Part shown: positions 5,145-33,882 of the stretch, piece after piece
Numbering within the stretch: the stretch's first letter is position 1
Layout of the letters: each line of letters begins with the position of its first letter
DNA from: Auanema rhodensis
Lineage: Eukaryota; Animalia; Nematoda
DNA: 64,000 nt
Direction of reading: 5' to 3'
NCBI GenBank assembly: GCA_964057225.1
Contig: OZ059896.1
Coordinates: 15,562,001-15,626,000, forward strand
The notes under the pieces: model-generated
The model's database searches: none
Seen by the model: only the letters and a program-made list of their open reading frames with translations
What the model was told of the DNA's origin: nothing
Translations under genes and position numbers: made by a program

Positions 5145-5321
5145 TGTTCCATACGTGTCCTATAAGTAGAGCTTATAAAACGGAACATTATAAAAACAAA
5201 TAGCTGACGCTACATTTGAGAAACAGGAATTCAATGCAACAATGAACGAACACTTTTTCATATTAAGTTTAATTAAAGAAAGCCCAATTCAAGCGGAACC
5301 TTGGGGAACCACCATGGAACG
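5145..5321 (+). repeat. Element A 5' LTR (177 bp, internally deleted)
   Basis: Matches 8663-9080 apart from 19-bp and 222-bp deletions and one substitution. Confidence 0.9.
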
Positions 5322-5342
5322 TGGAGGTTCCGCCGAGATTCG
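5322..5342 (+). promoter_or_regulatory. Primer-binding site, tRNA-Gln
   Basis: TGGAGGTTCCGCCGAGATTCG, complementary to the tRNA-Gln 3' end (...ATCTCGGTGGAACCTCCA, recalled), abutting the LTR. Confidence 0.85.
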
Positions 5343-5936
5343 TCTATAACCGACGAATCTCTAAGAACCATATTTCGCTACATAAATTTAATTTTGTTGT
5401 CTTTCATACATCTAATTAAAGAATTATATTTCGATTATGCTATATGAATTTAATTTGAAATCTTTCTCTTCTTTATTTCATTCATTCAAAGAACTTTATT
5501 TTGATTTTGATTCATAAATTAATACTGAAATCTTATATACATTTATTTAAAAAGATATATTTTGAAACAACTTAATTTTGAAATTTTATATTCATTCATT
5601 TAAAAGAAACATTTCGATTTTTATCCATATTCTAAGATCTTTCATTCATTTTTGAGGAAAAACTTTGTTTATAACTATCATAAATTAATTTGAAATTCTT
5701 TTATATTTATTCATTTAAAGAAAGGTATTTCGATATTTTTTTTTCTGTCAATCTTTTCTTTTACTGTTTTTTTTAATCAAAATCTATTCTATCTCTCATA
5801 AATTTTTGTTATAAAGTTTCAAACAATTTTTGAATCAAAAATGAATTAATTTCTTTCATGAATCATCACAAAATTCATTGTTTTATATATATTAAAATTC
5901 ATTAATTTCTATTCTATCCTTTAAAATGTATTACTC

Positions 5937-5940
<4 letters not shown>

Positions 5941-5972
<32 letters not shown>
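5941..5972. repeat. (AT)n microsatellite in element A
   Basis: About 16 AT units. Confidence 0.9.
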
Positions 5973-5976
<4 letters not shown>

Positions 5977-6205
5977 GTACAAAACTATTCTATACTAGTC
6001 CTATATTCCTACTATATTCCTACTATATTCCTATTTTATTTTTCTTTTATCTTCTTTTAAATTTTATCTTTTTCCCTCTCTTATTACTATTATTTTTTCT
6101 CTTCTTCCTAATATAACCCAGAAAACAGCCAAATAATTTTGAAATTTTTTATCTGAATCCCGAACCTAAGATTTACAATTTTGCATTTTGATCCTAAAAG
6201 TAGCC

Positions 6206-6690
6206 CGTGAGAAGCAATACCAGACTGTCTCGAGAACTGAGCGGAGGCAACCACTATTTTTGATATAAGACGTACGCATTCCTGATTTTGAAGATCCCTT
6301 TTTGGTCCTATTTTTGCAAATTTGAAAATTACGACAGAATTAGTCGAGAATGAAAGTGTTAGAGTGGTCTCACCATGAAAAATCAGGGGAGCAGAATTTC
6401 GTTAAGGGAGCGATTTCTGTGATTTTTCATAGGCAAGAGAAGTCTGGGAAAGTGAATGTACGAGGCCTGAGCACCTAATCTTGTCGAAAGACTGAAAGGG
6501 AATACTGCTTAGATCACCGTCGTATATTTCACGCCTATTCGAGAGATGGGAACTTGATCCTAGAAAGGGCGCACCGGTCACAGGCCCGTGTATGTACCCG
6601 ATTGAGCAATTCTCCGTTAGAAGATTCGCTGCAGGCTGGCCCCCTAGCAAGCGTCACGCATACAACCCCATATTGCCTCTCACGTTGTAT
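6206..6690 (+). other. Putative large structured RNA domain in element A
   Basis: Multiple nested inverted repeats (see findings). Confidence 0.6.
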
Positions 6691-6820
6691 ATATATTTTT
6701 ATAAGTTTCGCATCGTTGGTATAATAATTTCCTTTCCAGGAAAACCAACAAGATGACGGACTCGAAGAGTAAAAATCCTCCGCAGGATAAAACAAATCCA
6801 CAGAGCGCAGCCCCCCGGTA

Positions 6821-7192
6821 ATGATACGCACGTCGAGCCAGTACTCGAGCAGAATCAAAGAAAGAGAGGACCTCCAAATGTTTATGAGCCGGACACGAAG
6901 CGCCGACCTACTGCTGCAAAGAAACCACCCGCTATACCGGGTACCCCCGCGAAAAAAAATAGGCACAACAGCTATCAAAACTTCTCGCCACGCTATTACT
7001 CTTAGTAAAATTAAAACGTCTATTAACAAACAAACTCCTAAACGCAATTCTAACGTTATCAAAAGCTCTAGCTATGTTAGCACAAATACTTCCCCTTGTA
7101 AAGATTATTCTCAAATATCATTTTCATACCCAAATACTGCTATTCTTTCTTCTCCTCTTCCTCGAAATTCACCAAACTATCAGAGAAAATAG
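6821..7192 (+). CDS. Basic (K/R/S-rich) orphan ORF in element A
   Basis: 123-aa ORF; ATG overlaps the stop of a 22-codon upstream ORF (TAATG); no recognised domain. Confidence 0.35.
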   Translation: MIRTSSQYSSRIKEREDLQMFMSRTRSADLLLQRNHPLYRVPPRKKIGTTAIKTSRHAITLSKIKTSINKQTPKRNSNVIKSSSYVSTNTSPCKDYSQISFSYPNTAILSSPLPRNSPNYQRK

Positions 7193-7212
7193 AAGAAAAC
7201 GCAAGAAAAGAA

Positions 7213-7491
7213 TTGTATGAGGAACGGAAGAAGGAGCCACCCACAATTAAGAAATGGAGTTCAGCACTTAAATTGGCATTGGGATTAGAAGATAATTCTC
7301 CTACAACGCCAGCAAAGCCTTATCATGTGCCGATAAGGTATCACAGCACCATACCAGTAACAGAGCCAAAGAAGAGAGTTTCGAAGAGTCAGATCCCGGA
7401 CCCAAACTTCGTGGCACCAACAGTACCAGTCATCCATAAGAAAAGACCGTCAACAGTTATTGGGACTACAAGTAAGAAGCTAGAACAATAG
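7213..7491 (+). CDS. Basic/Pro-rich orphan ORF or exon in element A
   Basis: Frame open from 7102, overlapping the previous ORF; non-ATG start, so probably reached by splicing or frameshift if real. Confidence 0.35.
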   Translation: MYEERKKEPPTIKKWSSALKLALGLEDNSPTTPAKPYHVPIRYHSTIPVTEPKKRVSKSQIPDPNFVAPTVPVIHKKRPSTVIGTTSKKLEQ

Positions 7492-7856
7492 TAAAAATCC
7501 ATAATTTCTATATAAAAATCACAAAAAGTATAATAACATTTTCATAATTTTCATCTAAACTTGAACCTATATATGATTTTTTTTTCTCATTTAAGTAAGA
7601 CATAAAATTCTACACAAATTATTGTACATTTTTATTTTTTCACTCTCATAAAAATATTGTATCAATAACCAAAATTTCAAAATAAAATTATACATCATAC
7701 TTGGAATCTTTCAAAAATCACTGCAAAGTTTTAATCAACAATCTTCATCATTTTTTTTCACCTAACTGGTCAAAAAGGAGGCGACAAAAAGGAAGGAACA
7801 GACCGACCTAGTTTTAAAAAGGATAAAAAGGACAGAAAACAGTAACAAAGATAACA

Positions 7857-8459
7857 ATGTCCACCCAACTCCCTGAAGCCGTCGAAATTCCCCTCATGAT
7901 GGCCAAAAAGAGATGGCTTTCAATTCAACTATTAGTAAGAGAATTGAAGCAGCTAGGCGCCAATACCATCGCCAACCGCCCCAGGAAAGAGAAGATCCTG
8001 AAAGAGTTAGTTCAAGGACTAACAAGAGCGAACACCAGTACTGAAACGCTCAAAATCCTATGTTACCAATACGACAAGGATCAACTGTCGGAGGTTGACC
8101 ACTGCATAGGACCATGGACCAACACAGCAGGAGTCATCCGAGATGCCATTGCTGAACTAAGGGACCAACTAGGTTATTCACCTAGTTGCGATTCACCAGA
8201 ACAGCAGACACCAAACTGGATTATTGCTGAGACCCATTCGGCCTATCAAGAATGGAGCCTGCAACATTGCAGCGAACTGCCATCCACAGAGGCAAGAAAA
8301 AGCATTTTAAATGCTCTACAAATATTTCTGGCATCACCAGCAACCACCAAGGAAGAAATGGAAAGAAAAACGGATTTATGCAACAAGACTATGGATCTTC
8401 TCCACGACCTAGGATCATCACCATTACCAGAGATACACCAGTATTATGAAGAATACTAA
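7857..8459 (+). CDS. 200-aa predicted alpha-helical orphan protein in element A
   Basis: ATG-initiated clean ORF in AT-rich surroundings, protein-like composition, last ORF before the 3' LTR. Confidence 0.7.
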   Translation: MSTQLPEAVEIPLMMAKKRWLSIQLLVRELKQLGANTIANRPRKEKILKELVQGLTRANTSTETLKILCYQYDKDQLSEVDHCIGPWTNTAGVIRDAIAELRDQLGYSPSCDSPEQQTPNWIIAETHSAYQEWSLQHCSELPSTEARKSILNALQIFLASPATTKEEMERKTDLCNKTMDLLHDLGSSPLPEIHQYYEEY

Positions 8460-8662
8460 AAAGAACTTTTGAAAGATTCCCAGTATGATATATGATATAT
8501 TATTTTGTAATTACATTGTTTTCCTTTATTTTTTTCTCATAAAATTGTTCTGTATTATCAGTATTCTTTTATTTTTTGAAACATTTCATACAACTTTCAC
8601 ATTTGCATGGAATTTCACTTTCTCGATGTAGCTGAGGTCAGCTACTTTTTCGATATTAGGCA

Positions 8663-9080
8663 TGTTCCATACGTGTCCTATAAGTAGAGCGATTGACAAC
8701 GTCAATCGCTTATAAAACGGAACATTATAAAAACAAATAGCTGACGCTACATTTGAGAAACAGGAATTCAATGCAACAATGAACGAACACTTTTTCATAT
8801 TAAGTTTAATTAAAGAAAGCCCAATTCAAGCGGAACCAAGTTCCGCGGACCTGATATAACCACTTTTTATGCTCGTAAGGAATACTATATAAGGTTTCCT
8901 TACGAATCCTTTGGGCTGCGACTAGGAATCATTATGTAACTTTTATTATTGTAATTTGTATACTTTATCATGAATAAACCTTTCTCTCTATACTCTTTAT
9001 CATTTATATTATATTTGGAAGAAAAGAAAGTAATTCCATGTGGTTACCCAGCCGGAACCCTGGGGAACCACCATGGAACG
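8663..9080 (+). repeat. Element A 3' LTR (418 bp, full length)
   Basis: TGTTCCAT...ATGGAACG; contains TATATAA (~8886) and AATAAA (~8973). Confidence 0.9.
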
Positions 9081-9179
9081 GAAATGACGTCATTTTTCTC
9101 ATGACGCGTCAATTTTCCAAACCAAATTAGAAGGAACGGTTGCACTCCATACATATTCCGAAAAGAAAGGTAAGCATTC

Positions 9180-9298
9180 GCTTACGACCATACCACGTTG
9201 AAAGTACGCCATCCCGTCCGATCTGGCAAGTCAAGCAACGTTGGGCCCGGTTAGTACTTGGATCGGAGACGGCTTGGGAATCCCGGGTGCCGTAAGCT
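9180..9298 (+). rRNA. 5S: 5S rRNA (C39 type)
   Basis: array copy. Confidence 0.98.
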
Positions 9299-9399
9299 TT
9301 TCCTTTTTCTCATATTTTCATATAGTTTATCATCTTTAGTTACCTATATGGTATACGGTTAACTAGAAATGCTTTCGTTTTCCGAGAGAACTGTTAGAC

Positions 9400-9540
9400 A
9401 GCTTTGCGCAGTGGCGATAACGTGACCAATGAGGCTTTGCCGAGGTGCGTTTATTGCTGGTTGAAAACTTTTCCCAATTACCCGCGATATTCCCTGAAAC
9501 ATGGGTGATATACGCAATTTTTGAATGCCTGATAAGGCTG
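9400..9540 (+). ncRNA. U4: U4 snRNA
   Basis: array copy. Confidence 0.95.
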
Positions 9541-9669
9541 ATTAGCATATTATGGAAGATTGTTCCACGTGAAATGACGTCATTTTTCTCATGACGCGTC
9601 AATTTTCCAAACCAAATTAGAAGGAACGGTTGCACTCCATACATATTCCGAAAAGAAAGGTAAGCATTC

Positions 9670-9788
9670 GCTTACGACCATACCACGTTGAAAGTACGCC
9701 ATCTCGTTCGATCTGGCAAGTCAAGCAACGTTGGGCCCGGTTAGTACTTGGATCGGAGACGGCTTGGGAATCCCGGGTGCCGTAAGCT
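9670..9788 (+). rRNA. 5S: 5S rRNA (single C>T variant)
   Basis: array copy. Confidence 0.97.
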
Positions 9789-9889
9789 TTTCCTTTTTCT
9801 CATATTTTCATATAGTTTATCATCTTTAGTTACCTATATGGTATACGGTTAACTAGAAATGCTTTCGTTTTCCGAGAAAACTGTTAGAC

Positions 9890-10030
9890 AGCTTTGCGCA
9901 GTGGCGATAACGTGACCAATGAGGCTTTGCCGAGGTGCGTTTATTGCTGGTTGAAAACTTTTCCCAAATACCCGCGATATTCCCTGAAACATGGGTGATA
10001 TACGCAATTTTTGAATGCCTGATAAGGCTG
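9890..10030 (+). ncRNA. U4: U4 snRNA (T>A variant)
   Basis: array copy. Confidence 0.93.
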
Positions 10031-10159
10031 ATTAGCATATTATGGAAGATTGTTCCACGTGAAATGACGTCATTTTTCTCATGACGCGTCAATTTTCAAA
10101 ACCAAATTAGAAGGAACGGTTGCACTCCATACATATTCCGAAAAGAAAGGTAAGCATTC

Positions 10160-10278
10160 GCTTACGACCATACCACGTTGAAAGTACGCCATCCCGTTCG
10201 ATCTGGCAAGTCAAGCAACGTTGGGCCCGGTTAGTACTTGGATCGGAGACGGCTTGGGAATCCCGGGTGCCGTAAGCT
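10160..10278 (+). rRNA. 5S: 5S rRNA
   Basis: array copy. Confidence 0.98.
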
Positions 10279-10379
10279 TTTCCTTTTTCTCATATTTTCA
10301 TATAGTTTATCATCTTTAGTTACCTATATGGTATACGGTTAACTAGAAATGCTTTCGTTTTCCGAGAGAACTGTTAGAC

Positions 10380-10520
10380 GGCTTTGCGCAGTGGCGATAA
10401 CGTGACCAATGAGGCTTTGCCGAGGTGCGTTTATTGCTGGTTGAAAACTTTTCCCAATTACCCGCGATATTCCCTGAAACATGGGTGATATACGCAATTT
10501 TTGAATGCCTGATAAGGCTG
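10380..10520 (+). ncRNA. U4: U4 snRNA (+1 A>G variant)
   Basis: array copy. Confidence 0.92.
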
Positions 10521-10596
10521 ATTAGCATATTATGGAAGATTGTTCCACGTGAAATGACGTCATTTTTCTCATGACGCGTCAATTTTCCAAACCAAA

Positions 10597-10663
10597 TGTC
10601 GCGATAAGCGAGTGAGTTTGTATAATTTTTTTATCTTCAACAATTGTTTTATTTGTTTCTCCT

Positions 10664-10701
<38 letters not shown>

Positions 10702-10951
10702 TTCTTCTTTCTTCTAACTTCCTAAGTAATTTTTATCCATACCACATGTTGTGTTATACATGTGGCATGACTAACTCTTTGTTTCAGGCTGACGACCGCC
10801 CACGAGAAGAGATCAGTCTTACATTTTCAACGTTCGCAGTCAGTGATTTTATTCCGTGCTTGTCTTGTTAATTCATCAATAAACCCTTTTCTACATATTC
10901 GCTTTGTGTTTTACTTCCAACCATACTATACACTTGTGGTATAACGCCACA
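10597..10951 (+). repeat. Element B 5' LTR (355 bp, contains (CT)n)
   Basis: Direct repeat of 20001-20355. Confidence 0.97.
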
Positions 10952-10954
10952 AAT

Positions 10955-10966
10955 TGGTGCATCGGC
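10955..10966 (+). promoter_or_regulatory. Primer-binding site, probably tRNA-Gly
   Basis: TGGTGCATCGGC, 3 nt after the LTR. Confidence 0.75.
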
Positions 10967-11229
10967 TAGTTCAGATCTTAGCCGCTTCAAGTCCCGCGTG
11001 GCAGGTGAGATACAGCTCAAACCAAGCGTGTTTGAGCAAAAAACATACTTAATAGAAATCGTGGCAACCATTAGTCCACGTCAAGTCACACCAAAAAGAC
11101 TTGAACCATAAGCAAACTCTGCAGACAGAAACAGAGATTCACTATCACATATACTGTGATCACCAAACAAACAAAAAAAAAAGAGAAAGTAAAAGGAATA
11201 TAAGCGTTATTCCTACATCTACGACAAAA

Positions 11230-20067: not shown

Positions 20068-20105
<38 letters not shown>

Positions 20106-22982: not shown

Positions 22983-23083
22983 TTTCCTTTTTCTCATATT
23001 TTCATATAGTTTATCATCTTTAGTTACCTATATGGTATACGGTTAACTAGAAATGCTTTCGTTTTCCGAGACAACTGTTAGAC

Positions 23084-23224
23084 AGCTTTGCGCAGTGGCG
23101 ATAACGTGACCAATGAGGCTTTGCCGAGGTGCGTTTATTGCTGGTTGAAAACTTTTCCCAATTACCCGCGATATTCCCTGAAACATGGGTGATATACGCA
23201 ATTTTTGAATGCCTGATAAGGCTG
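23084..23224 (+). ncRNA. U4: U4 snRNA
   Basis: array copy. Confidence 0.95.
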
Positions 23225-23353
23225 AATAGCATGGTATAGTAGATTGTTCCACATGAAAAGACGTCATTTTTCTCATGACGCGTCAATTTTCCAAACCAAA
23301 TTAGAAGGAACGGTTGCACTCCATACATATTCCGAAAAGAAAGGTAAGCATTC

Positions 23354-23472
23354 GCTTACGACCATACCACGTTGAAAGTACGCCATCCCGTTCGATCTGG
23401 CAAGTCAAGCAACGTTGGGCCCGGTTAGTACTTGGATCGGAGACGGCTTGGGAATCCCGGGTGCCGTAAGCT
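23354..23472 (+). rRNA. 5S: 5S rRNA
   Basis: array copy. Confidence 0.98.
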
Positions 23473-23573
23473 TTTCCTTTTTCTCATATTTTCATATAGT
23501 TTATCATCTTTAGTTACCTATATGGTATACGGTTAACTAGAAATGCTTTCGTTTTCCGAGACAACTGTTAGAC

Positions 23574-23714
23574 AGCTTTGCGCAGTGGCGATAACGTGAC
23601 CAATGAGGTTTTGCCGAGGTGCGTTTATTGCTGGTTGAAAACTTTTCCCAATTACCCGCGATATTCCCTGAAGCATGGGTGATATACGCAATTTTTGAAT
23701 GCCTGATAAGGCTG
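23574..23714 (+). ncRNA. U4: U4 snRNA (two-substitution variant)
   Basis: array copy. Confidence 0.93.
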
Positions 23715-23843
23715 ATTAGCATATTATGGTAGATTGTTCCACGTGAAATGACGTCATTTTTCTCATGACGCGTCAATTTTCAAAACCAAATTAGAAGGAA
23801 CGGTTGCACTCCATACATATTCCGAAAAGAAAGGTAAGCATTC

Positions 23844-23962
23844 GCTTACGACCATACCACGTTGAAAGTACGCCATCCCGTCCGATCTGGCAAGTCAAGC
23901 AACGTTGGGCCCGGTTAGTACTTGGATCGGAGACGGCTTGGGAATCCCGGGTGCCGTAAGCT
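23844..23962 (+). rRNA. 5S: 5S rRNA (C39 type)
   Basis: array copy. Confidence 0.98.
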
Positions 23963-24063
23963 TTTCCTTTTTCTCATATTTTCATATAGTTTATCATCTT
24001 TAGTTACCTATATGGTATACGGTTAACTAGAAATGCTTTCGTTTTCCGAGACAACTGTTAGAC

Positions 24064-24204
24064 AGCTTTGCGCAGTGGCGATAACGTGACCAATGAGGCT
24101 TTGCCGAGGTGCGTTTATTGCTGGTTGAAAACTTTTCCCAATTACCCGCGATATTCCCTGAAACATGGGTGATATACGCAATTTTTGAATGCCTGATAAG
24201 GCTG
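24064..24204 (+). ncRNA. U4: U4 snRNA
   Basis: array copy. Confidence 0.95.
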
Positions 24205-24333
24205 ATTAGCATATTATGAAAGATTGTTCCACGTTAAATGACGTCATTTTTCTCATGACGCGTGAATTTTCAAAACCAAATTAGAAGGAACGGTTGCACT
24301 TCATACATATTCCGAAAAGAAAGGTAAGCATTC

Positions 24334-24452
24334 GCTTACGACCATACCACGTTGAAAGTACGCCATCCCGTCCGATCTGGCAAGTCAAGCAACGTTGGGC
24401 CCGGTTAGTACTTGGATCGGAGACGGCTTGGGAATCCCGGGTGCCGTAAGCT
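24334..24452 (+). rRNA. 5S: 5S rRNA (C39 type)
   Basis: array copy. Confidence 0.98.
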
Positions 24453-24503
24453 TTTCCTTTTTCTCATATTTTCATATAGTTTATCATCTTTAGTTACCTA
24501 TAT

Positions 24504-24869
24504 CGTTCCATTATGCTCCTACGTATATTGAACAGACCATTGTAGTCTGCTCAACTACGCGTATAGTATTCCATAAGTGTAGCGGTATGGAAACAGAGCA
24601 TAAGGATTACATAAGATAAGGAAATATATAGGTTTATTATACACAATACAATATCATTACAATACATTAACACAAGGATAAAGTAAACTACATTTACAAG
24701 ACAAAGACTAATATATAAGATTAACTAAGTTAGATGCAAACCGTCCATGGGCTTGCAAAGGGGCGAACTCCCGAATAGGGGCATGAGGGAAGGCGGTGCC
24801 ATTCCTCATTCCTCTAGTCGGTCTGGCTCTAACCCTGCAGTTACATATATAGAGTCTCCGAATGGAACG
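24504..24869 (-). repeat. Element C 3' LTR (366 bp)
   Basis: Direct repeat of 33517-33882; preceded on the minus strand by PPT-like GAAAAAGGGCA. Confidence 0.96.
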
Positions 24870-25573
24870 TGCCCTTTTTCAAAGATTGTCGCGACCTCGC
24901 GATATTTTAAACAAAAATTTGGGCTTATATGTAACTGAGTTTTAGAGTTCAATTGTTTTAGCTTCACAATAACTATAGTATGATAGAGTTTTAGTTAGTA
25001 TACAAACAAAATTACAATAATTTATAAGAAGGGTTCAATATAATATGAAGGGACGATGAATTAGAATATTATTAATTTCATAAATTAATTATCTTAATAT
25101 TCAAGCATTTCCTAATAGAGATTGTAGAATAAAGGGGCTAGTAATGAATGGGAATATGTTATTATTTTGACTAATGGTCTCAAGAAGTACTCATTTCTAA
25201 ATTGAACCGAGATTATGATTTAATAATGTGTCTCCATATGTCTCCCAGAGTGAATCCTTGATTACTAATGGAGACTACCACTTAAGATGAAATTGTGGTT
25301 GATACGCCTACCAGTGTTCATCTCATCTTATTTGGAGAGGCACATGGAGCTCGGATGGTTGTCAAAATGTCCTCTAGTCCGCATAGGATTACGGTAACTT
25401 GGAACCATTAGTCATAACATCTCCTCGTTTAGAATTTGCCTTATTTTTCCTTTCTCAATCTCTATTAAATGCTATTTTTATTTTGAATGTTATTTAGCAT
25501 TAATTTTTTTTTTTTTTTTTAATTCATCGTTATTTTGTTACAATAATTTAAATAACGTAGCATTATCTTGTTG

Positions 25574-26656
25574 TTATTCTTCTTCATTCCTCGGAAGCCA
25601 TATTTCGTCTTCATTTTCATCTTCTGGCTCTGTATCTATGCTATCCTTGTTGTTCCTGTTGATCACTTCTATTATTTCGATGTCGCTATCTTCTTCTGCT
25701 TGACTTTCTCGAAACCTTGCGCGAGTGTTGTAAGAGATGTTTTGTGAAGCAGGAGAGAAGATTTTCAAGTTATCTTTGTGGATATCTTGTAGTTTTCCTG
25801 ATGAATTTCTGATTTGAACTTTTGATCCTTCTACGTTGATGACTTCGCATGGTCCATCATAGCTTTTCCGAAGCTTTTGGCCGATTTGGTGTGATTTTAT
25901 AGTCGTCATCACCATGTCGCCCGGTTGAATGTCTCTATGGTGTGCTCTTTGCGTTCTATCTTTCTTCTTTTTCGCATTTTCTTGATTTTTAGCTATGCGG
26001 TTCTTTATTATTTCGTCTCTCTTGTCCATATCTGGTCTTCTTTGGAGTAATTCTTCAGAAATTTCTTGAATTTTGGTGATCGTTTCTGGTAATTCAGCGT
26101 CCATTGACATTCTGCATTCTTTACCGAATAATGCAATGTATGGCGCAATCCCTGTAGTCGCGTGCTGAATATTGTTAATAGCAAAAGTGATTTTTGGTAA
26201 TACAGTATCCCAGTCACTAAGGTCCTCTTTTAAGTAGTGGGTTAATCCTTCTTCGAGGGTTCGGTGAAGTCTTTCCACTTGTCCATTTGAGTTCTTTTGG
26301 TGTGGTAGTGTTGGTTCATGTTTGATTCCAAGTTTAGTACACATTTCTTCGAACTTTTTAGATACAAAGTTTGAACCTCTATCGGTGATCAAGCGATGGG
26401 GTGGTCCAAAAATGTAAACGAAATGTCTTAGAAATCGATCAATTGTGATTTCCGTTGTTATTTGTGGTACAGCAATTGTTGTTGACCATTTTGTAAATGC
26501 GTCTTGCATGGTAATGACGTAGGTACAGTTTCTTTTTGAAGGGGGAAATGGTCCCATTACGTCCATGTGGACTCGTTCAAATGGCTTGCTTGGTATCTCA
26601 AAATGACCTATTGGTTGTACCGTCATGGAATGTGGATCTTTTTTTTCTTTGAGCAC
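25574..26656 (-). CDS. Integrase core and C-terminal domain of element C (frameshifted from the upstream polyprotein)
   Basis: HMDVMGP, ITDRGSNF, GQVERLHRTL catalytic motifs, GPY/F-like YDGPC; the HHCC finger is at the end of the upstream ORF. Confidence 0.93.
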   Translation of the reverse strand: MLKEKKDPHSMTVQPIGHFEIPSKPFERVHMDVMGPFPPSKRNCTYVITMQDAFTKWSTTIAVPQITTEITIDRFLRHFVYIFGPPHRLITDRGSNFVSKKFEEMCTKLGIKHEPTLPHQKNSNGQVERLHRTLEEGLTHYLKEDLSDWDTVLPKITFAINNIQHATTGIAPYIALFGKECRMSMDAELPETITKIQEISEELLQRRPDMDKRDEIIKNRIAKNQENAKKKKDRTQRAHHRDIQPGDMVMTTIKSHQIGQKLRKSYDGPCEVINVEGSKVQIRNSSGKLQDIHKDNLKIFSPASQNISYNTRARFRESQAEEDSDIEIIEVINRNNKDSIDTEPEDENEDEIWLPRNEEE

Positions 26657-29600
26657 ATTTAATGCAGTTCTTGATGAATATAGTAATGTCGTTCTGCATA
26701 TTTGTCCAATAGAATCTTCTTAGAATTGCTTCTTTTGTTTTAATAATTCCTTGATGTGCTGCAATTGTAGGATCCTCATGAAAAACTTTGATTATTTCCT
26801 CAATTATGGGGTGTTCTTGTGGTATTACGATAGCGGGTTGTGGCTTTTTGTCTGTTGGTTTTGTATAGAGCAAGTCATTTATGACACAATATCTGTCATT
26901 AGCTGTCATGTTCTTTTGTGCTCTATATTCAATCTCCGCTATCGTCCGTTTAATCCAAGGGGTGCTTAGTTGAATTTCCTTTATTGTTGGTGTATTTATG
27001 GCGTTAATGTGAATTTCTTCCATTTTCTTCTTCTTTGTTTCCGGCTTAGCATCGTTAGCTTCTTCACCTATATATCGAGATAGAGCATCGCATACTTTAT
27101 TTAATTGGCCTGCGCGATATTTTATTTCAATATCATATTCTTGGATGACCAGCTGGAACTTCGCAAGACGACCAAATAAGTCTCTGCGTGTCATTAAGCT
27201 GGTAAGAGGTCGATGGTCCGTAATACATATAGTATGAGTTCCAAGAATGTATGTACGGAATTGATTTAATGCATATACAAGGCCTAATGCTTCTATCTCG
27301 ATTGGTGCGTAGTTACGTTCGGCTTTAACTAGTTTTCTGCTTGCAAATGCGATAGGGTGTAGATTTTTCAGAGGTTGTTTTGGATCTTCCGGTTGTAATA
27401 ATACAGCACCTATGGCGATGTTACTACCGTCGCTTTCAACTATAAACAAGCGGTCCGATTTAGGTGGGCTTAAAACGGGTGCCTGTATTAAACTTCTTTT
27501 AAGGAGGTCTAAAGCTTCTTGATGTTTGTTTTCCCATTTGAATTCAGTATCTGCCTTTGTCAGATCGTATAAAGGGCTTGCGATACGTGCAAAATCTTTC
27601 ATGAATTTGCGAAAGAATCCAACCATTCCCAAGAATGCTCGTACACCTGTTGCATTCTTTGGTGCCGGATAATCTTGTATGGCGGCGACTTTTTGAGGGT
27701 CAGGTTTTATACCTTGACGTCCTACAATAAGTCCTAGAAATTTCACTTCTGGTTGAGCAAAAGCGCATTTCTTAAGCTTTATCTTCATTCCCAATTCTTC
27801 TACTGCTTGCAGTAAATCATCGATATCTTTGAGATGTTGTTCTCTTGTATCAGATATAACTAATAGATCGTCCAAATAAACAAATAGTTTACAAGAACAT
27901 TTACTTTGCAAATACCTTACTGCTGTTTGAAAGGTATGAGGGGCTCCACAAAGGCCCATCGGCATCCGTTTGTACTGGTATGTGCCGGATGTGGTCGTAA
28001 ATGCTGTTAGTGGTCGATCTGATTTTCTCAAGGATATTTGAAAAAATCCTGACACTAAATCGAAGTTTGAGAAAAATTGGGCGCCTGCTGCCAAATCAAC
28101 TATGTCAGAAATGCTTGGAATGACATAAGTTTGCTTGCGTGTGACATTATTTAAAGCTCGAAAATCTGTCACAAACCTATACGTGTCATCTTTCTTCTTA
28201 ACTAGTACTACAGGGCTATTAAATAGAGATGTAGAAGGCTCTATTATGCCTTGCTCAAGCATTTCTTTGACTTGTTTTTCAATTTCTTCCTGTTTTCCTA
28301 AGGGAATACGTGTTATTCTCGGCTTTGGCATATCCATATCTGTTCTCAATGGTATGGTATGCTCTATAGGACCTTTAAATAAGCCTATTTTCCTGTCCTC
28401 GTTAAGAAATGCCTCACGATGGCTTTCAATTATTTTTGTAAGCTCATGTTTTTCTTCTTTCGTGAGATCAGCATTCTCTAGATCAAGATCTTTTATGAAG
28501 TCTCTTGGAAAATATGGTAGTTTACTCTCCCAATCGGCCTCTGGCGGAACATATGGTAGAATTGGCTTATGCTTAAAGGGTTCACAAGCCGGAATTTCTC
28601 CAATTATTGCCTGTCCGATGACTGAATTAGCTTCCATAGCTATTGTTTCATCGGTATTGTTACGGAACATAACATATACTCCACTGGTATCACGAAACGC
28701 AGTTGGATATAATGATTTTAATGCGCTTCCACTATCCCCTAAGACAACCACTTCGTTAGATTCTAGTGGTTTATCTGTCTTTATTGGGATAGGTGCCTCT
28801 TCATCAGGCTTTAATGTTTTTGTTCTTAAATTAATGATATTCACAGTTATCTCCGTATGCTTAATAGATTCGTTTCCTATTAATGGGATGGCATTGTTTC
28901 CAATCTCCAACCTCTTCTTGGATGGTTTAAGGCTGACGTCGATGTTTTCGCTGTCAAGCGCTTTCATGAAATCTAGTCCAATTAAAGCGGGAGCAGGACA
29001 GTCATGATCGTTTGAGACCAAAAAGGTGTGTTCGATCTCGTAACCGGCAATTTCAATTACAAGATTTATCTTTCCATAAAATGTGAAAGTGGACTTGTTG
29101 GCTGCCATCGCTACTAAATGTCTCTTCTTGACATTTTCGGCCATGTTCAGATATTTGAGGGTGGAGAGCCTAACATATGACACTGATGAGCCTGAATCCC
29201 ATAAAGCTAAAATCAGTTTATCTTCAACTGATATATATATTAATGGTAACTTTGTTTCCGCTGATACAATAGAAGCAACAAATGGTATTGCGATTGGAAT
29301 AAATGTTACTAAAGCAGGATAGTATTGCTTCATGATGTTATCTGGCATCTGTTGGTCTGGGCGGCTTACAAGTTCCAATGTTTCTTCATAGCTTGGGGGC
29401 TCATTATCTATTTCGTGGACATGCATTACGGTTAGTGGAGTGGCTCTGAAGAACCAAAATTTAGCAACAACGAAAAGAATTATTAATACTGCGGCAATCG
29501 TAACCATTGATCCTATGAAGATGAGTGTTCTCTCAATTGATCCTATTAGAAATTGCTTTACGCTAGTCCAGGCGGAAGTTGTGAACTCAGCTGCTTTAGA

Positions 29601-31586
29601 GATATAGTCACTGCCCTTTTTCAAAAGATTAAAGGCGGACGTAATTTTTGGATCGTTGTGAATAGTATGTAAAACATGGTTCTGTCGTATGGATGCTAAA
29701 CTTGCTCCATATGCAATAGCTGTTGACATTGAGTAAACTCTCAATGATAAATTGGTGTATAAGTTAGCGCCTGTGAACTTTAAAGGTGTTAATTGGTGGT
29801 ATTGCGCTTTATCAAAGAGTGATATTGGTTTTACTTCAACCGATCCATTTATATTTATCCATTCTCCATTTTGATAGTATACATCTGTGGGTACATGTTC
29901 GCAATCTATCTCTTTTCCATGTGTTAATAAGTCTCTTGATCCTGGAGCAGCAAAATATAATCTCTCATCTTCTGTTATTACTGGTGTTTCCAAATAGCAT
30001 GTATCATTGATCTTATGATTATGATAAACAGCTTTAGGTTGAAGAGGTAGGCATATATGAACATGAACTATATCGCTGCCTACGAAACGGGCTGCAATAT
30101 CCTCTCTTCCTAAAATAGTCCTCATTGCTATTGTAGGTTCTATGTGTAAAATAGAACGCCATAGCTCGAGGTATCTATTTTGAATCTCACATATGGATTC
30201 ATAAGATTCCATGAAATGTTTCTGTAGCTCTTCTTGTATGAGTGTTGTTGTATATTGTAGATGATCTTGAGCTATTCTGCGAGATACGTTGAGGTTGAAT
30301 TGTATTTCGTTGTTCACTTTTGACGCTGTATACGTTGCCTGAGCCTGAATTTCTCTGGTTTCTACGGGTGGAGATGATGTTCTTTGTTTCCTTAAGATTC
30401 GTGACGCCGTGTCAGTGACTGTTGCTAATGTTGTTGGCGAGAGAGTCGTAGTTATCGCGGCTGTTGTCGTCTCAACTGTGGTTGTCGTCGGAATCCGAGT
30501 CGTATGGCTTTTAGTTGTCTCCTGAACTAGTGAAGCGGGTTTGTCCGTTGTTGTCGTTAATGACAGTCTTCTAGTCAGATAAGGCGGTGTTTCAATATCC
30601 TCTAACAGTGGTAAAAATGTTTTTATAAGTAGCTGGCGTGTATCTGCGCTTGGGTTTTGAATGCGAGGGTGGGGCCCTATCGATATACCGTAGTTAGAAT
30701 CTTTATCTCGATATAATTTGTTGGTATCTGGCACATTGATTGTTAATTGTCGGAACTTTTCATCATCTACGGCTGCTGCTGTTTTATTTGGCCTTATTAC
30801 TCGCAATGTCATCAAGTTATGGTATAAGTAAAGAGTGTTTCTAAGTACTATACGCTCATCAGCATTGTCAGTTGTTAGAGTTGGTCGGATCGGCGGCATG
30901 TTCACAAAGGATTTTAAAACCTCTTGCCTTGATGGTACCGACAGATTGTTTTCAAATATTACCGGTGTATAAGCTAACTCCATCGCTATGCTTTCGGCTC
31001 TTTCACGGTAGGATCCGTCTTTTTCTAGCAGTTTTTCGTCAAATTCGTGTGCTGTTAATCTGTCACCTATCTGTTCTAATAATTGTTGTGAGGTTAAATA
31101 CCGTATAGCGCCGCGAGTGGTTGCTGCCAGTTCCTTTTGCGCAAGAAAATAAAGTATTGCTTCCTCAGGGTCGTGTATTTCGTATGTTTGAAGGAAACGT
31201 TGTATGGATTTATCAGATACGGGACTTCTTAAGAAGAAATAAAACTTCTCGGGATGTGCTGAAACCCAGTCAATAATTGAATATGAAGGGTTGACAGCTC
31301 GTCTGGCCTTTATAAGCGGTATTATCTTTGGAGTTGAAGCTGAAGTTTGAATATTGTAGTCCTGAATATAGAAATCAGGGTCCTCCTCGGTGTTGTCCGG
31401 AGGTGAATACGTGCCTTCTCGAGGAATGAAGGTTTTCTCGACTTTGGGTTTTACCTCTTGTTCAGGCTCTTCAATCTGAACACTGAGGAGTCGAGTGCGG
31501 CTTCTGGTTCGACTGGCGACTGCGATGTCGTCACTGGACTCAGAAGGGTATAGAGCAGGGACGGCCGAAGAGTATCTTCGTGCCAC
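26598..31586 (-). CDS. Polyprotein: unknown N-terminus, Thr-rich linker, gB-like glycoprotein C-half with TM, protease, RT, RNase H, integrase zinc finger
   Basis: RKQR furin-like site; LQY...ICEIQNRYLELWRSILHIEP...AARFVG...C...CY...P gB domain III/IV pattern; TM LIFIGSMVTIAAVLIILFVV; LWDSGS; YLDD; ESDGS; H...H...CIKC. Confidence 0.9.
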   Translation of the reverse strand: MARRYSSAVPALYPSESSDDIAVASRTRSRTRLLSVQIEEPEQEVKPKVEKTFIPREGTYSPPDNTEEDPDFYIQDYNIQTSASTPKIIPLIKARRAVNPSYSIIDWVSAHPEKFYFFLRSPVSDKSIQRFLQTYEIHDPEEAILYFLAQKELAATTRGAIRYLTSQQLLEQIGDRLTAHEFDEKLLEKDGSYRERAESIAMELAYTPVIFENNLSVPSRQEVLKSFVNMPPIRPTLTTDNADERIVLRNTLYLYHNLMTLRVIRPNKTAAAVDDEKFRQLTINVPDTNKLYRDKDSNYGISIGPHPRIQNPSADTRQLLIKTFLPLLEDIETPPYLTRRLSLTTTTDKPASLVQETTKSHTTRIPTTTTVETTTAAITTTLSPTTLATVTDTASRILRKQRTSSPPVETREIQAQATYTASKVNNEIQFNLNVSRRIAQDHLQYTTTLIQEELQKHFMESYESICEIQNRYLELWRSILHIEPTIAMRTILGREDIAARFVGSDIVHVHICLPLQPKAVYHNHKINDTCYLETPVITEDERLYFAAPGSRDLLTHGKEIDCEHVPTDVYYQNGEWININGSVEVKPISLFDKAQYHQLTPLKFTGANLYTNLSLRVYSMSTAIAYGASLASIRQNHVLHTIHNDPKITSAFNLLKKGSDYISKAAEFTTSAWTSVKQFLIGSIERTLIFIGSMVTIAAVLIILFVVAKFWFFRATPLTVMHVHEIDNEPPSYEETLELVSRPDQQMPDNIMKQYYPALVTFIPIAIPFVASIVSAETKLPLIYISVEDKLILALWDSGSSVSYVRLSTLKYLNMAENVKKRHLVAMAANKSTFTFYGKINLVIEIAGYEIEHTFLVSNDHDCPAPALIGLDFMKALDSENIDVSLKPSKKRLEIGNNAIPLIGNESIKHTEITVNIINLRTKTLKPDEEAPIPIKTDKPLESNEVVVLGDSGSALKSLYPTAFRDTSGVYVMFRNNTDETIAMEANSVIGQAIIGEIPACEPFKHKPILPYVPPEADWESKLPYFPRDFIKDLDLENADLTKEEKHELTKIIESHREAFLNEDRKIGLFKGPIEHTIPLRTDMDMPKPRITRIPLGKQEEIEKQVKEMLEQGIIEPSTSLFNSPVVLVKKKDDTYRFVTDFRALNNVTRKQTYVIPSISDIVDLAAGAQFFSNFDLVSGFFQISLRKSDRPLTAFTTTSGTYQYKRMPMGLCGAPHTFQTAVRYLQSKCSCKLFVYLDDLLVISDTREQHLKDIDDLLQAVEELGMKIKLKKCAFAQPEVKFLGLIVGRQGIKPDPQKVAAIQDYPAPKNATGVRAFLGMVGFFRKFMKDFARIASPLYDLTKADTEFKWENKHQEALDLLKRSLIQAPVLSPPKSDRLFIVESDGSNIAIGAVLLQPEDPKQPLKNLHPIAFASRKLVKAERNYAPIEIEALGLVYALNQFRTYILGTHTICITDHRPLTSLMTRRDLFGRLAKFQLVIQEYDIEIKYRAGQLNKVCDALSRYIGEEANDAKPETKKKKMEEIHINAINTPTIKEIQLSTPWIKRTIAEIEYRAQKNMTANDRYCVINDLLYTKPTDKKPQPAIVIPQEHPIIEEIIKVFHEDPTIAAHQGIIKTKEAILRRFYWTNMQNDITIFIKNCIKCAQRKKRSTFHDGTTNRSF

Positions 31587-31998
31587 TTTGGAATCACTCT
31601 TGGTTCGGAAAAACCGCGAGTGTTTCGTTATATGGGGGATGTTGACGTTGAATGAGTGACAAGAAATTCGGGTCGGTTATAGGAAAAGTAAGAAACGTTT
31701 GAAGATTGAGACGTGGCGTCTTTCGCCGAGAATCGTTATTAGATGAGAAAGAGTTTTAAAATCTTGGCCTGAGATCTGGCTCCGCCTATCTACCGTATTC
31801 TCTTTTCTTTATTCTATTTCACAGATGTTCATCAATTATAAATTTTTTTGGTCTTCGCTCTTTCTAGCCTCAATCTTAATACTTTACTCTAATTGAATTC
31901 TTGAAAGTATGAGAGAGATTTTCAGTCGTTTTATGTCCCCTTTTTATGCATAAGAATCTTTATATTTGTAGAGCTGAAAAAAAAAAATAAATCAAAGA

Positions 31999-32532
31999 AT
32001 GGCTTATGAAGGTCTATCGGGAATGACTTTTGTCTTGAGGAAGCTGTACGCTGACCTCGTCTTGTATGATCAAGACGAAGTGTTAGCTTATAGGCCGCAC
32101 CCAGACATAATTAAGATGGTTGGTTAAAACAAAGAAACATGTTATCTTAATAAGAATTTTTAGTTTATTGAGGATTTAAAGATGCATTATCTGGGAAGGG
32201 GATTAGTAAACTTCTCCCTAATGCAGGAAATAGCGGATGAGGTTGCAGCTATCCGGCGATGGTGCCTCACCGACTTGTGCGCGCATTGGTATGAAAACCC
32301 AAATCTGGTCGCATCCCCTTGGAATTGGTATGAGCATAAGTCTCATGATTTTTATGATTATATGTCTAAAATTTTGTTTAAAATTTATTTATTTTATGAA
32401 CAGTCTCCTATGGGCTTATTGCTAAGGACCTCTGCGGATTCGGTGTATTCGCAGTATTTAGAGCCTAGCGATGAGCCCATCTCACAGCCTATAGAATTTG
32501 TGAGACAGTTGCATTTTAAATGGGGCTTTTAA
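31999..32532 (+). CDS. Two-exon antisense accessory gene in element C (~162 aa, unknown function)
   Basis: Exon 1 31999-32118 (40 codons), 45-nt GT...TTTTTAG intron 32119-32163, exon 2 32164-32532 in frame; AATAAA at ~32549. Confidence 0.7.
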
Positions 32533-33503
32533 CAATTGTTTCATATATAATAAATACTTAATTTCACTCATTTGTTCTCTCTCTCTTTTTTTTTTTTTTC
32601 CATAACACAAACTTTGGTCGAGCTTATTAATAAAGAAGGAGTGCGTGCGCCTTGGGAAAATGGCTCATGTGCACGTTATTATTAAAAGCCGTGGGCGATT
32701 CTTTTTCGGAATGATTTTGGCATGCTAATGAGATTCCGAGAATATTTAAAAAGATTGCTCATTTTACTAATGGACTGAGACCAAAGCTCGTTTATAAAAC
32801 GCAATTTTTTTCTTTAAACCATTCTACTAATTTATAGAATATTACAATATGAATACTACGGTAGGTGTGTGGGAATATCTTATGATGTTAGCAACAAAAA
32901 ATGAGCTGAGGAAGGTGACACATTCTACGGAGAAGAAAACATCCGTAGCCCATGTGCTTTCGCCAAAATGACCTGACAGGCAATAAAATTTGTGCCAGGA
33001 TTTTTCGGACTAGTGTGGTCTATTCTCACAATCAAAAAAAAAATAAAAACCGAATAACGGCTCCCGCAAAAATATTTAGTTAGCATGCTCTTTTACGCCT
33101 GAATTTAACTTTCAAATCTCTAGTCCTGACCACAATAAAATATTAAACTTTGTGCGCTTTCAAAATTTCATTCTAACTCCTCGTTGCCAAATAATAATGT
33201 AATCAAAATTTCGTTTGGTGAAATTGTCCCCTATTTCGATCCAAACGTCCTCAAAAAAAAATGCAAGAGAAGCGGTGCAGGATACGGTATTATAAGGGTG
33301 GACACTCAGACGGTTTTATGAGTGGGGACAGCGGGTGAAATTTCAAAATTATGTAGTCCTAGCTCTCTAAAAGAGAGATCCCTTGTACCTGCACCTTATA
33401 CAAGTTGGCGCCCTCATTATGTTGCTAACCGTGGAGGAAGTTTTAATTTAGATATCAAAATATGGACTTTTTATGCGAGTTTTTGCGACAAAAATGAGTT
33501 CGA

Positions 33504-33516
33504 GGTGGAACCTCCA
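33504..33516 (-). promoter_or_regulatory. Primer-binding site, tRNA-Gln
   Basis: Minus strand TGGAGGTTCCACC abutting the 5' LTR. Confidence 0.88.
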
Positions 33517-33882
33517 CGTTCCATTATGCTCCTACGTATATTGAACAGACCATTGTAGTCTGCTCAACTACGCGTATAGTATTCCATAAGTGTAGCGGTA
33601 TGGAAACAGAGCATAAGGATTACATAAGATAAGGAAATATATAGGTTTATTATACACAATACAATATCATTACAATACATTAACACAAGGATAAAGTAAA
33701 CTACATTTACAAGACAAAGACTAATATATAAGATTAACTAAGTTAGATGCAAACCGTCCATGGGCTTGCAAAGGGGCGAACTCCCGAATAGGGGCATGAG
33801 GGAAGGCGGTGCCATTCCTCATTCCTCTAGTCGGTCTGGCTCTAACCCTGCAGTTACATATATAGAGTCTCCGAATGGAACG
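33517..33882 (-). repeat. Element C 5' LTR (366 bp)
   Basis: Direct repeat of 24504-24869. Confidence 0.96.

What the first reader, a model, noticed from the sequence alone, without database searches (positions are those of the whole stretch)
5145..33882. Elements A and C share a full cis-signal set but no coding homology: satellite/helper or bipartite retroelement
Seen in both: termini (T/C)GTTCCAT...ATGGAACG; 4-bp TSD; tRNA-Gln PBS with no spacer; a hairpin then a 21-nt motif with 17/21 identity about 50 nt after the PBS start (CCATATTTCGCTACATAAATT at 5368 vs CCATATTTTGATATCTAAATT from 33465 minus); a GAGGTC-capped hairpin 23 nt before the 3' LTR; GGCA right before that LTR. LTR interiors and ORFs look otherwise unrelated. 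C has env-pol but no recognisable gag. A has no pol but has its own basic and helical ORFs. Inference: A is mobilised by C-family RT and IN. The stronger, unproven hypothesis is a segmented system in which A-type elements supply structural or accessory proteins.
Basis: partly seen in the sequence, partly recalled or inferred. Interest (0 to 1): 0.9.

Follow-up and report, generated by a model that had tools for sequence, protein, structure and literature searches.

The report
Pol-less LTR element sharing a neighbour's signals
A 3.9-kb LTR retroelement with no enzymes of its own carries the same end sequences, tRNA primer site and leader motifs as a nearby, itself defective, envelope-carrying gypsy-type element of a probable nematode. 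It is most likely an ordinary parasite of that element lineage, not half of a two-part virus.

Summary
Elements A (5145-9080, +) and C (24504-33882, -) share 8-nt LTR termini, 4-bp target duplications, a tRNA-Gln-type primer site abutting the LTR, a 17/21 leader motif, and an AGGU-looped hairpin 23 nt before the 3' LTR followed by GGCA. Each positional match is rare in shuffles. Element B, a Bel/Pao element in the same array, shares none. I add a strand-specific cluster of ATTTYGA motifs and a shared 14-mer in both leaders.

LTR interiors and coding regions are unrelated. A has no PR, RT or IN. Its one convincing ORF (200 aa) is an orphan with no capsid signature.

C is a Ty3/gypsy element with a herpesvirus-gB-like env upstream of pol. 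Published nematode elements of this kind are GAG-ENV-POL. The closest relative (Auanema) has an N-terminal stretch that C lacks. This C copy is therefore a 5'-defective derivative, not a streamlined segment.

Verdict: A is a non-autonomous LTR element of C's cis-signal class, dependent in trans on full-length relatives. The bipartite model is not supported. The "satellite" DNA around them is a 5S rRNA-U4 snRNA gene array. I fetched no relatives' DNA, so the helper's identity is untested.

The parts
5141..5144 (.). A target-site duplication, left copy (GAAA)
   Evidence: The flanks overlap by 4 nt on the intact array unit.
5145..5321 (+). A 5' LTR (177 bp). It is shorter than the 3' LTR by two deletions.
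   Evidence: The shared parts are 186/187 identical to the 3' LTR.
5322..5342 (+). A primer binding site, tRNA-Gln type, no spacer
   Evidence: It matches 19/21 positions of the tRNA-Gln probe printed in PMC11421004.
5335..5361 (+). A leader hairpin (10-bp stem) overlapping the 3' part of the primer site
   Evidence: -21.5 kcal/mol for the 79-nt stretch, z = -3.5.
5368..5388 (+). A copy of the shared 21-nt leader motif
   Evidence: 17/21 identical to C's copy; 3 of 2000 shuffles reach this.
5322..5780 (+). A leader with degenerate 53-70-nt repeats and 7 sense-strand ATTTYGA motifs. It includes a 14-mer shared with C at 5573-5586 (a second copy lies at 6134-6147).
   Evidence: Motif density is 15/kb, against 0.1-0.6/kb in B and in the non-repeat tail; none on the antisense strand.
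7673..7716 (+). Left arm of an inverted repeat that brackets A's ORF
   Evidence: Duplex with 8467-8512 is -37.3 kcal/mol, against -9.6 +/- 2.4 for shuffles.
7857..8459 (+). A's only convincing ORF (200 aa, predicted all-helical, orphan)
   Evidence: ORF; codon score 0.20, like true coding; no homologue or family; pLDDT 57; no fold match at E <= 0.001.
8467..8512 (+). Right arm of the inverted repeat. It starts 8 nt after the ORF's stop codon.
8628..8645 (+). A hairpin before the 3' LTR (7-bp stem, AGGU loop; GAGGTC at 8634-8639)
8659..8662 (+). GGCA immediately before A's 3' LTR
8663..9080 (+). A 3' LTR (418 bp), with a TATA-like box near its start and an AATAAA signal
9081..9084 (.). A target-site duplication, right copy (GAAA)
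24500..24503 (.). C target-site duplication (ATAT), copy next to the 3' LTR
24504..24869 (-). C 3' LTR (366 bp)
   Evidence: 366/366 identical to the 5' LTR.
24870..24873 (-). GGCA immediately before C's 3' LTR, preceded by a 9-nt purine run
24889..24902 (-). C hairpin before the 3' LTR (5-bp stem, AGGU loop; GAGGTC at 24893-24898)
   Evidence: It lies the same 23 nt from the LTR as in A.
25574..31676 (-). C env-remnant/pol gene, given as one part because it is broken. Breaks counted: env lacks its N-terminal part and a start codon; one change of reading frame inside integrase; no in-frame stops.
   Evidence: Domain bounds: gB-like 29838-30269; membrane segment 29433-29537; protease 28962-29231; RT 27726-28202; RNase H 27135-27536; integrase 26300-26807.
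31677..33503 (-). C leader, 1.8 kb with no open frame above 60 codons and 24 upstream ATGs. Its first 460 nt hold 4 sense-strand ATTTYGA motifs and the shared 14-mer (33338-33351). No gag is present.
33445..33465 (-). C copy of the shared 21-nt leader motif
33504..33516 (-). C primer binding site (13 nt, tRNA-Gln type, no spacer)
33517..33882 (-). C 5' LTR (366 bp)
33883..33886 (.). C target-site duplication (ATAT), copy next to the 5' LTR

Best explanation
A is a non-autonomous LTR retrotransposon. It is 3.9 kb, has no protease, reverse transcriptase or integrase, and sits on the LARD/TRIM continuum. Its cis-acting signals belong to the same class as those of C. C is a Ty3/gypsy (Metaviridae) element of the nematode gB-type GAG-ENV-POL kind.

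Inferred mechanism:
- A's RNA is packaged through its leader (the 21-nt motif and reiterated ATTTYGA motifs).
- Reverse transcription is primed by tRNA-Gln.
- Plus-strand synthesis is primed next to the hairpin/GGCA region.
- Integration uses an integrase that recognises the GTTCCAT...ATGGAACG ends and makes 4-bp staggered cuts.
- All the proteins are supplied in trans by full-length members of C's lineage, either C's own family or a close sister family.

The C copy in this window cannot be that helper alone. It has no gag, its env lacks its N-terminal part and a start codon, and its integrase is split by one frame change. It too must have been copied with proteins supplied in trans.

Shown here: the anatomy, the shared signals and their rarity by chance, the absence of enzymes in A, the defects of C, and recent insertion of both.

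Inferred only: which proteins act on A, and the role of each motif.
For: - Shared termini, 4-bp duplications verified against the empty site, and an abutting tRNA-Gln-type primer site.
- Leader 21-mer 17/21, reached by 3 of 2000 shuffles. GAGGTC at the same offset plus GGCA, reached by 20 of 20000 shuffles.
- Hairpins with different stems but the same AGGU loop.
- ATTTYGA on the sense strand only: 7 in A's first 459 leader nt and 4 in C's, with 0 of 500 shuffles reaching either count. Background density is 0.1-0.6/kb.
- A 14-mer that occurs exactly three times in 64 kb, all within A or C in sense orientation.
- B, in the same array, shares none of these.
- A has no pol: Pfam and tblastx find nothing.
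- Young insertions: LTR identity is 186/187 over the shared parts in A and 366/366 in C.
- C's architecture and its relative.
- Published GAG-ENV-POL order in nematodes: PMC13524379.
- Non-autonomous LTR families with no LTR similarity to any partner are common: 61 of 115 families in sugar beet (PMC13570524).
Against: - LTR interiors are unrelated. Classic helper/parasite pairs usually share most of the LTR.
- Conserved termini and primer site are also what sister families of one clade share by descent, so they do not single out C's family as the helper.
- A has almost no purine tract before its 3' LTR.
- C's leader hairpin is weak.
- The ATTTYGA motif was chosen after looking at A, so only its enrichment in C is an independent test.
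- No full-length helper was seen. The host genome was not examined.
- The only protein relative found comes from another genus.
Confidence: 0.6

Rival explanations
1. A is a deletion derivative, or a parasite, of a separate autonomous family that has A-type LTRs. This would be a sister lineage of C. On this view the shared termini, primer site and small motifs are inherited clade-wide features, and A does not depend on C's family.
For: - LTR interiors and all internal sequence are unrelated between A and C.
- The termini differ at the first base (T versus C), and the primer sites diverge after 13 nt.
- It is general knowledge of LTR elements that termini and primer sites are the slowest-changing nucleotides.
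Against: - No A-type element with pol is in the window.
- A retains no recognisable gag, pol or env remnant such as deletion derivatives often keep.
- The shared leader motifs go beyond the minimal integrase and primer signals.
Confidence: 0.28
2. This is the first reader's stronger model: a bipartite or complementing pair. A-type elements would supply a structural or accessory protein (the 200-aa helical ORF), in the manner of a TR-GAG element. C-type elements would supply env remnant and pol. Neither would be complete alone.
For: - A's ORF is intact, far longer than expected in 62% A+T sequence, and has codon usage like the true genes of B and C.
- This C copy has no gag yet inserted very recently.
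- Gag proteins of nematode elements are reported as highly divergent (abstract of bioRxiv 10.64898/2026.03.22.711591), so a failure to find homology is weak evidence.
Against: - Relatives of C carry their own gag region upstream of env.
- C's long frame lacks a start codon, a signal segment and the Cys-rich env domain, which is the mark of a truncation.
- A's ORF has no homologue among 5.8 billion clusters or 1.84 billion representatives.
- It has no Pfam family, no zinc knuckle and no capsid among fold matches, though the model is poor (pLDDT 57).
- A's other open frames score like random ORFs.
- The ORF is bracketed by a 44-46-nt inverted repeat, so it may be a passenger cassette.
Confidence: 0.06
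3. The similarities are coincidence between two unrelated LTR elements in A+T-rich DNA.
For: - Plain local alignments of the LTR ends and of the region before the 3' LTR do not stand out from shuffles when position is ignored.
- C's hairpins are not unusually stable.
Against: - Several independent, position-anchored matches each have a shuffle frequency of about 0.001-0.02.
- The termini are identical at 15 of 16 positions.
- The tRNA choice and the duplication length are the same.
- Motif clusters are present in both leaders and absent from B and the tail.
Confidence: 0.02

Closest known systems
Non-autonomous LTR retrotransposons (the LARD / long-TRIM continuum; Kalendar 2004 and Witte 2001, as cited in PMC13570524)
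   Same: A has two LTRs, a tRNA primer site, a target duplication and an internal region without enzymes. It depends on proteins supplied in trans. Its partner is often not traceable by LTR similarity, as for 61 of 115 families in sugar beet.
   Different: At 3.9 kb, A falls between the classical size classes. It carries one intact orphan ORF. It sits in an animal (probably nematode) genome and matches an env-carrying lineage. The match is limited to 8-10-nt termini, the primer site and short motifs.
TR-GAG elements and BARE-2 with BARE-1 (gag-only or gag-defective elements complemented by a full partner). TR-GAG is described in PMC13570524. BARE-2/BARE-1 is from my own knowledge.
   Different: A's ORF shows no gag feature. 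BARE-2 and BARE-1 share LTRs, and A and C do not.
Nematode gB-type Ty3/gypsy elements with GAG-ENV-POL order (Sacco et al. 2022, J Gen Virol, not held; PMC13524379)
   Same: C has a herpesvirus-gB-like env segment upstream of protease-RT-RNase H-integrase, plus LTRs and a tRNA primer site. Its closest protein is from the nematode Auanema.
   Different: This copy has no gag. Its env lacks the signal-like and Cys-rich N-terminal part. It has one frame change in integrase. Its termini are CG...CG rather than TG...CA.
Atlas-type belpaoviruses of nematodes (PMC9094657; bioRxiv 10.64898/2026.03.22.711591)
   Same: Neighbour B has a single 2686-aa frame holding gag-like DUF1759, protease, RT, integrase and a phlebovirus-Gc-like env.
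   Different: B is not part of the A/C signal class. It served here as the internal negative control.

Membership tests
Non-autonomous LTR retrotransposon (A) | Direct LTRs flanked by a target-site duplication | tested here: met
   LTRs at 5145-5321 and 8663-9080. GAAA is duplicated, and the empty site was reconstructed on the array unit.
Non-autonomous LTR retrotransposon (A) | Primer site complementary to a tRNA 3' end next to the 5' LTR | tested here: met
   19/21 match to a mouse tRNA-Gln probe printed in PMC11421004. The host tRNA was not available.
Non-autonomous LTR retrotransposon (A) | Polypurine tract before the 3' LTR | tested here: inconclusive
   Only AGG precedes CA in A. C has a 9-nt purine run. 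Both share GGCA and an upstream hairpin.
Non-autonomous LTR retrotransposon (A) | No protease, RT, RNase H or integrase coding capacity | tested here: met
   Pfam finds nothing on any open frame of 40 or more codons tested, and tblastx against B and C is negative.
Non-autonomous LTR retrotransposon (A) | Multiple copies in the genome | not tested
There is one copy in the window.
TR-GAG type element (A) | An ORF encoding Gag (capsid fold and/or zinc knuckle) | tested here: inconclusive
   No Pfam gag, no CCHC motif, and no capsid among Foldseek matches. But the model is weak (pLDDT 57) and there are no homologues for an alignment.
Ty3/gypsy gB-type GAG-ENV-POL element (C) | Pol domain order protease-RT-RNase H-integrase | tested here: met
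   Pfam: RVT_1 2.9e-32, RT_RNaseH 1.5e-28, Integrase_H2C2 3e-15, rve 3.8e-16.
Ty3/gypsy gB-type GAG-ENV-POL element (C) | gB-like (class III) envelope gene upstream of pol | tested here: met
   Monjiviricetes_fusion 3e-15. PDB glycoprotein B chains down to 2e-4, over the central-helix region only. A membrane segment follows. The N-terminal part is missing.
Ty3/gypsy gB-type GAG-ENV-POL element (C) | A gag gene upstream of env | tested here: not met
   The 1.8 kb between the primer site and the long frame has no frame above 60 codons and no family hit. So this copy is a defective member, not an intact one.
Helper/parasite pair of LTR elements (A with C's family) | Homologous LTRs | tested here: not met
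   Only the terminal 8-10 nt match. The interiors align at chance level.
Helper/parasite pair of LTR elements (A with C's family) | Shared primer site, signals before the 3' LTR, and leader signals | tested here: met
Helper/parasite pair of LTR elements (A with C's family) | Co-occurrence of parasite and helper across genomes, with a full-length helper present | not tested
   This needs the host assembly and its relatives. I fetched no DNA of relatives.
Helper/parasite pair of LTR elements (A with C's family) | Direct demonstration of dependence | not testable with these tools
   It lies outside what this report may propose.

The most novel reading that the evidence does not exclude
A-type and C-type elements form a complementing pair. 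A's 200-aa helical protein would be a very divergent structural or packaging protein. The gag-less, pol-bearing C lineage would use it, and the shared leader motifs would be its binding sites. That would make this a naturally split LTR retroelement.
Probability: 0.06. Interest if true: 0.8.

Novelty: new member of a known kind. Interest (0 to 1): 0.33.

Why it matters
If the reading holds, this is a clear animal example of a non-autonomous LTR element that keeps only the minimal cis signals of an env-carrying gypsy-type lineage: termini, primer site, leader motifs and a hairpin before the 3' LTR. Such a pair marks which few nucleotides the lineage's integrase, reverse transcriptase and packaging protein probably read. 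That is useful for annotating nematode retroelements, where non-autonomous LTR elements are abundant (bioRxiv 10.1101/2025.09.22.674508). It also shows that a gag-less, env-truncated copy of the lineage inserted recently, so complementation in trans is probably active in this genome. It does not change any general concept.

Tried and rejected
- Position-free local alignments of LTR ends, leaders and the region before the 3' LTR. Only the leader and the LTR 3' end stood out. I replaced these with position-anchored tests.
- Global LTR alignment: chance-level.
- A's 200/210-aa ORF: no hit in the word-indexed search, in the exhaustive HMMER search of 1.84 billion representatives, in Pfam at E <= 5, or in PDB sequences beyond designed helical repeats at E > 0.05.
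- AlphaFold2 on A's ORF without an alignment gave pLDDT 57. Foldseek against PDB and BFVD gave nothing at E <= 0.001 and no capsid.
- C's first 400 residues folded with the Auanema row gave pLDDT 39. The relative's layout places that region inside env instead.
- The Auanema N-terminal 500 residues against the whole window by tblastn: no hit at E <= 1.
- Pfam on the leader's small frames and on the antisense 116-aa ORF: nothing.
- A second search from the Auanema protein found only itself.
- Rfam found nothing inside A, B or C.
- Scanning for further copies of the 21-mer with 3 mismatches gave only chance-level matches.
- The bacterial promoter/terminator scan is irrelevant to a eukaryotic LTR.
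- I found no target duplication around the inverted repeat that brackets A's ORF, so a nested transposon is not shown.
Full report
ANATOMY OF THE WINDOW

Positions 2 to about 42,800 are a 490-bp tandem array interrupted by three LTR elements. Rfam shows that the "satellite" is a gene array. Each unit holds one 5S rRNA gene and one U4 snRNA gene, 40 intact copies of each, all on the + strand.

- Element A: 5145-9080, + strand.
- Element B: 10597-20355, + strand.
- Element C: 24504-33882, - strand.

All three lie in spacers and disrupt no gene:
- A lies 36 nt after a U4 gene and about 96 nt before the next 5S gene.
- B lies 78 nt after a U4 gene and 58 nt before a 5S gene.
- C lies about 51 nt after a 5S gene and 54 nt before a U4 gene.

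The 21 kb beyond the array holds no further copy of A, B or C.

CHECK OF THE OBSERVATION

- Termini: TGTTCCAT...ATGGAACG in A and CGTTCCAT...ATGGAACG in C.
- The 4-bp duplications (GAAA, ATAT) are confirmed by reconstructing the empty site on an intact array unit. For C this also fixes the ends as CG...CG with no ambiguity.
- The primer site begins at the first base after the LTR in both.
- I compared the primer sites with a mouse tRNA-Gln probe printed in PMC11421004 (the same 3' end appears in a primer in PMC7744096). A matches 19 of 21 positions and C the first 13.
- The leader 21-mers are 17/21 identical at offsets 46 and 51. Only 3 of 2000 dinucleotide shuffles do as well.
- GAGGTC lies exactly 23 nt before the 3' LTR in both. 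It folds into hairpins with different stems (7 bp in A, 5 bp in C) and the same AGGU loop closed by G-C.
- A 6-nt run at the same anchored position, together with the shared GGCA, occurs in 20 of 20000 shuffles.
- B serves as an internal control. It has TG...CA ends, a 5-bp duplication, a different primer site and none of the motifs.
- LTR interiors and coding regions (tblastx) are unrelated.

Two corrections: A's 3' LTR starts at 8663, and A's LTRs are unequal. The 5' LTR is 177 bp and the 3' LTR 418 bp. The 5' LTR lacks two stretches, one of which holds the AATAAA signal. The shared parts are 186/187 identical.

ADDITIONAL SHARED SIGNALS

- A's first 460 leader bases are degenerate 53-70-nt repeats.
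- The heptamer ATTTYGA occurs 7 times there, on the sense strand only.
- It occurs 4 times in the first 459 nt of C's leader, again on the sense strand. No shuffle out of 500 reaches either count.
- Its density elsewhere (B, the rest of C, the 21-kb tail) is 0.1-0.6 per kb.
- I chose the motif after looking at A, so only the count in C is an independent test.
- A 14-mer containing the motif occurs exactly three times in the 64 kb: twice in A and once in C's leader, each in the element's sense orientation.

WHAT C IS

Pfam finds protease, RT, RNase H, the integrase zinc domain and the integrase core. Upstream in the same long frame lies a segment matching the Monjiviricetes fusion glycoprotein and herpesvirus glycoprotein B families. 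PDB sequences of glycoprotein B match the same segment, which corresponds to the central-helix region. A membrane segment follows it.

This is the Ty3/gypsy gB-type lineage. It is reported in nematodes with the non-canonical order GAG-ENV-POL (PMC13524379, which cites Sacco et al. 2022).

The only protein relative found is a 1666-aa fragment from Auanema sp. JU1783.
- It is 49% identical to C from the env C-terminal part through protease into RT, and 37% identical over an upstream helical region.
- It carries about 486 further N-terminal residues: a short helical piece, a basic N/R/P/Q/Y-rich stretch, a hydrophobic signal-like segment and a domain with 13 cysteines.
- C has none of this. tblastn finds no trace of it anywhere in the window. 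C has no N-terminal hydrophobic segment and no cysteine in its first 397 residues.

Breaks counted in this copy of C:
- No gag gene. The 1.8 kb after the primer site has no frame above 60 codons, 24 upstream ATGs and no family hit.
- The env lacks its N-terminal part and a start codon. The first ATG lies more than 200 codons into the frame.
- One change of reading frame inside integrase. I cannot exclude an assembly error as its cause.
- No in-frame stop in the 1692-codon frame.

The LTRs are 366/366 identical. This defective form was therefore copied recently and needed at least Gag from elsewhere.

WHAT A IS

- No open frame of A matches any Pfam family or any part of B or C.
- The 200-aa ORF (7857-8459) is far longer than expected in this composition. 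Its codon-usage score (0.20) is like those of the true genes of B and C (0.18-0.26).
- The other "basic" frames score like random ORFs (0.0-0.11).
- The ORF has no homologue in the 5.8-billion-cluster search or in the exhaustive search of 1.84 billion representatives.
- It has no PDB relative and no zinc knuckle.
- The single-sequence model is all-helical but weak (pLDDT 57). Foldseek finds only generic helical repeats and no capsid.
- The ORF is bracketed by a 44-46-nt inverted repeat whose arms pair at -37 kcal/mol. That fits either a long-range RNA stem or a passenger cassette.

INTERPRETATION

A needs enzymes made elsewhere, and its cis signals match C's class. That is the known pattern of a non-autonomous LTR element.

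The match is limited to 8-10-nt termini, the primer site and short motifs. This does not exclude a helper relationship, because many non-autonomous families have no LTR similarity to any partner (PMC13570524). It also cannot distinguish C's own family from a sister family as the helper.

The bipartite model fails on three counts. The lineage is published with its own gag. C looks truncated rather than streamlined. A's ORF has no structural-protein signature. I keep that model at about 6% because Gag proteins of nematode elements are very divergent and A's ORF looks like a real gene.

The proposed motif roles are all inference: packaging for the leader motifs, plus-strand priming for the hairpin/GGCA region, and integrase recognition for the termini.

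STEPS LEFT OUT, AND SLIPS

- I fetched no DNA of relatives by look-up, pattern or accession: not the Auanema contig, not other copies, not public collections. The family census is therefore missing.
I built no consensus.

Noticed in passing
window 2-5144, 9081-10596, 20356-24503, 33883-42679: The 490-bp "satellite" is a tandem array of linked 5S rRNA and U4 snRNA genes, 40 intact copies of each, all on the + strand. Three different LTR elements sit in its spacers without hitting a gene. This could reflect targeting near small-RNA genes or simply tolerance of insertions in a redundant array.
   Followed up: partly
window 10597-20355 (+): Element B is an apparently intact Bel/Pao element of the Atlas type. 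One 2686-aa frame (11101-19161) holds DUF1759 gag-like, protease, RT, Peptidase_A17, integrase, DUF5641 and phlebovirus Gc-like env domains. Its LTRs are 354/355 identical and it has a 5-bp duplication (CCAAA).
   Followed up: partly
window 28962-29537 (-) and P0001 residues about 1160-1375: In C and in its Auanema relative, the env membrane segment and cytoplasmic tail run on in the same frame into protease and RT. Pol would therefore be made as an Env-Pol fusion tethered to the cytosolic face of the membrane. That could be how this lineage brings Pol into particles. This is inference only.
   Followed up: no
window 7673-7716 and 8467-8512: A 44-46-nt inverted repeat brackets A's only good ORF. 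The right arm starts 8 nt after the stop codon. The duplex is -37.3 kcal/mol, against -9.6 for shuffles. I saw no target duplication around it.
   Followed up: partly
window 5145-5321 versus 8663-9080: A's two LTRs are unequal (177 versus 418 bp). The 5' LTR lacks two stretches, including the one with the AATAAA signal. Each missing stretch is bounded by a short direct repeat, and the smaller one is itself a small palindrome.
   Followed up: partly
window 24504, 33882, 5145, 9080: The LTR ends are non-canonical: CG...CG in C and TG...CG in A, instead of TG...CA. For C this was verified unambiguously against the empty site.
   Followed up: yes
window 32182-32532 (+): A 116-aa ATG ORF lies antisense inside C's noncoding leader. 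It has no Pfam family, and its codon score is like that of a random ORF.
   Followed up: partly
window 10660-10700; 52.7, 54.8, 56.0, 57.3, 58.5 and 63.8 kb: A (CT)n/(GA)n microsatellite run inside B's LTR recurs at six places in the non-array tail. The tail at 56-62 kb is also strongly purine-skewed on the + strand.
   Followed up: no
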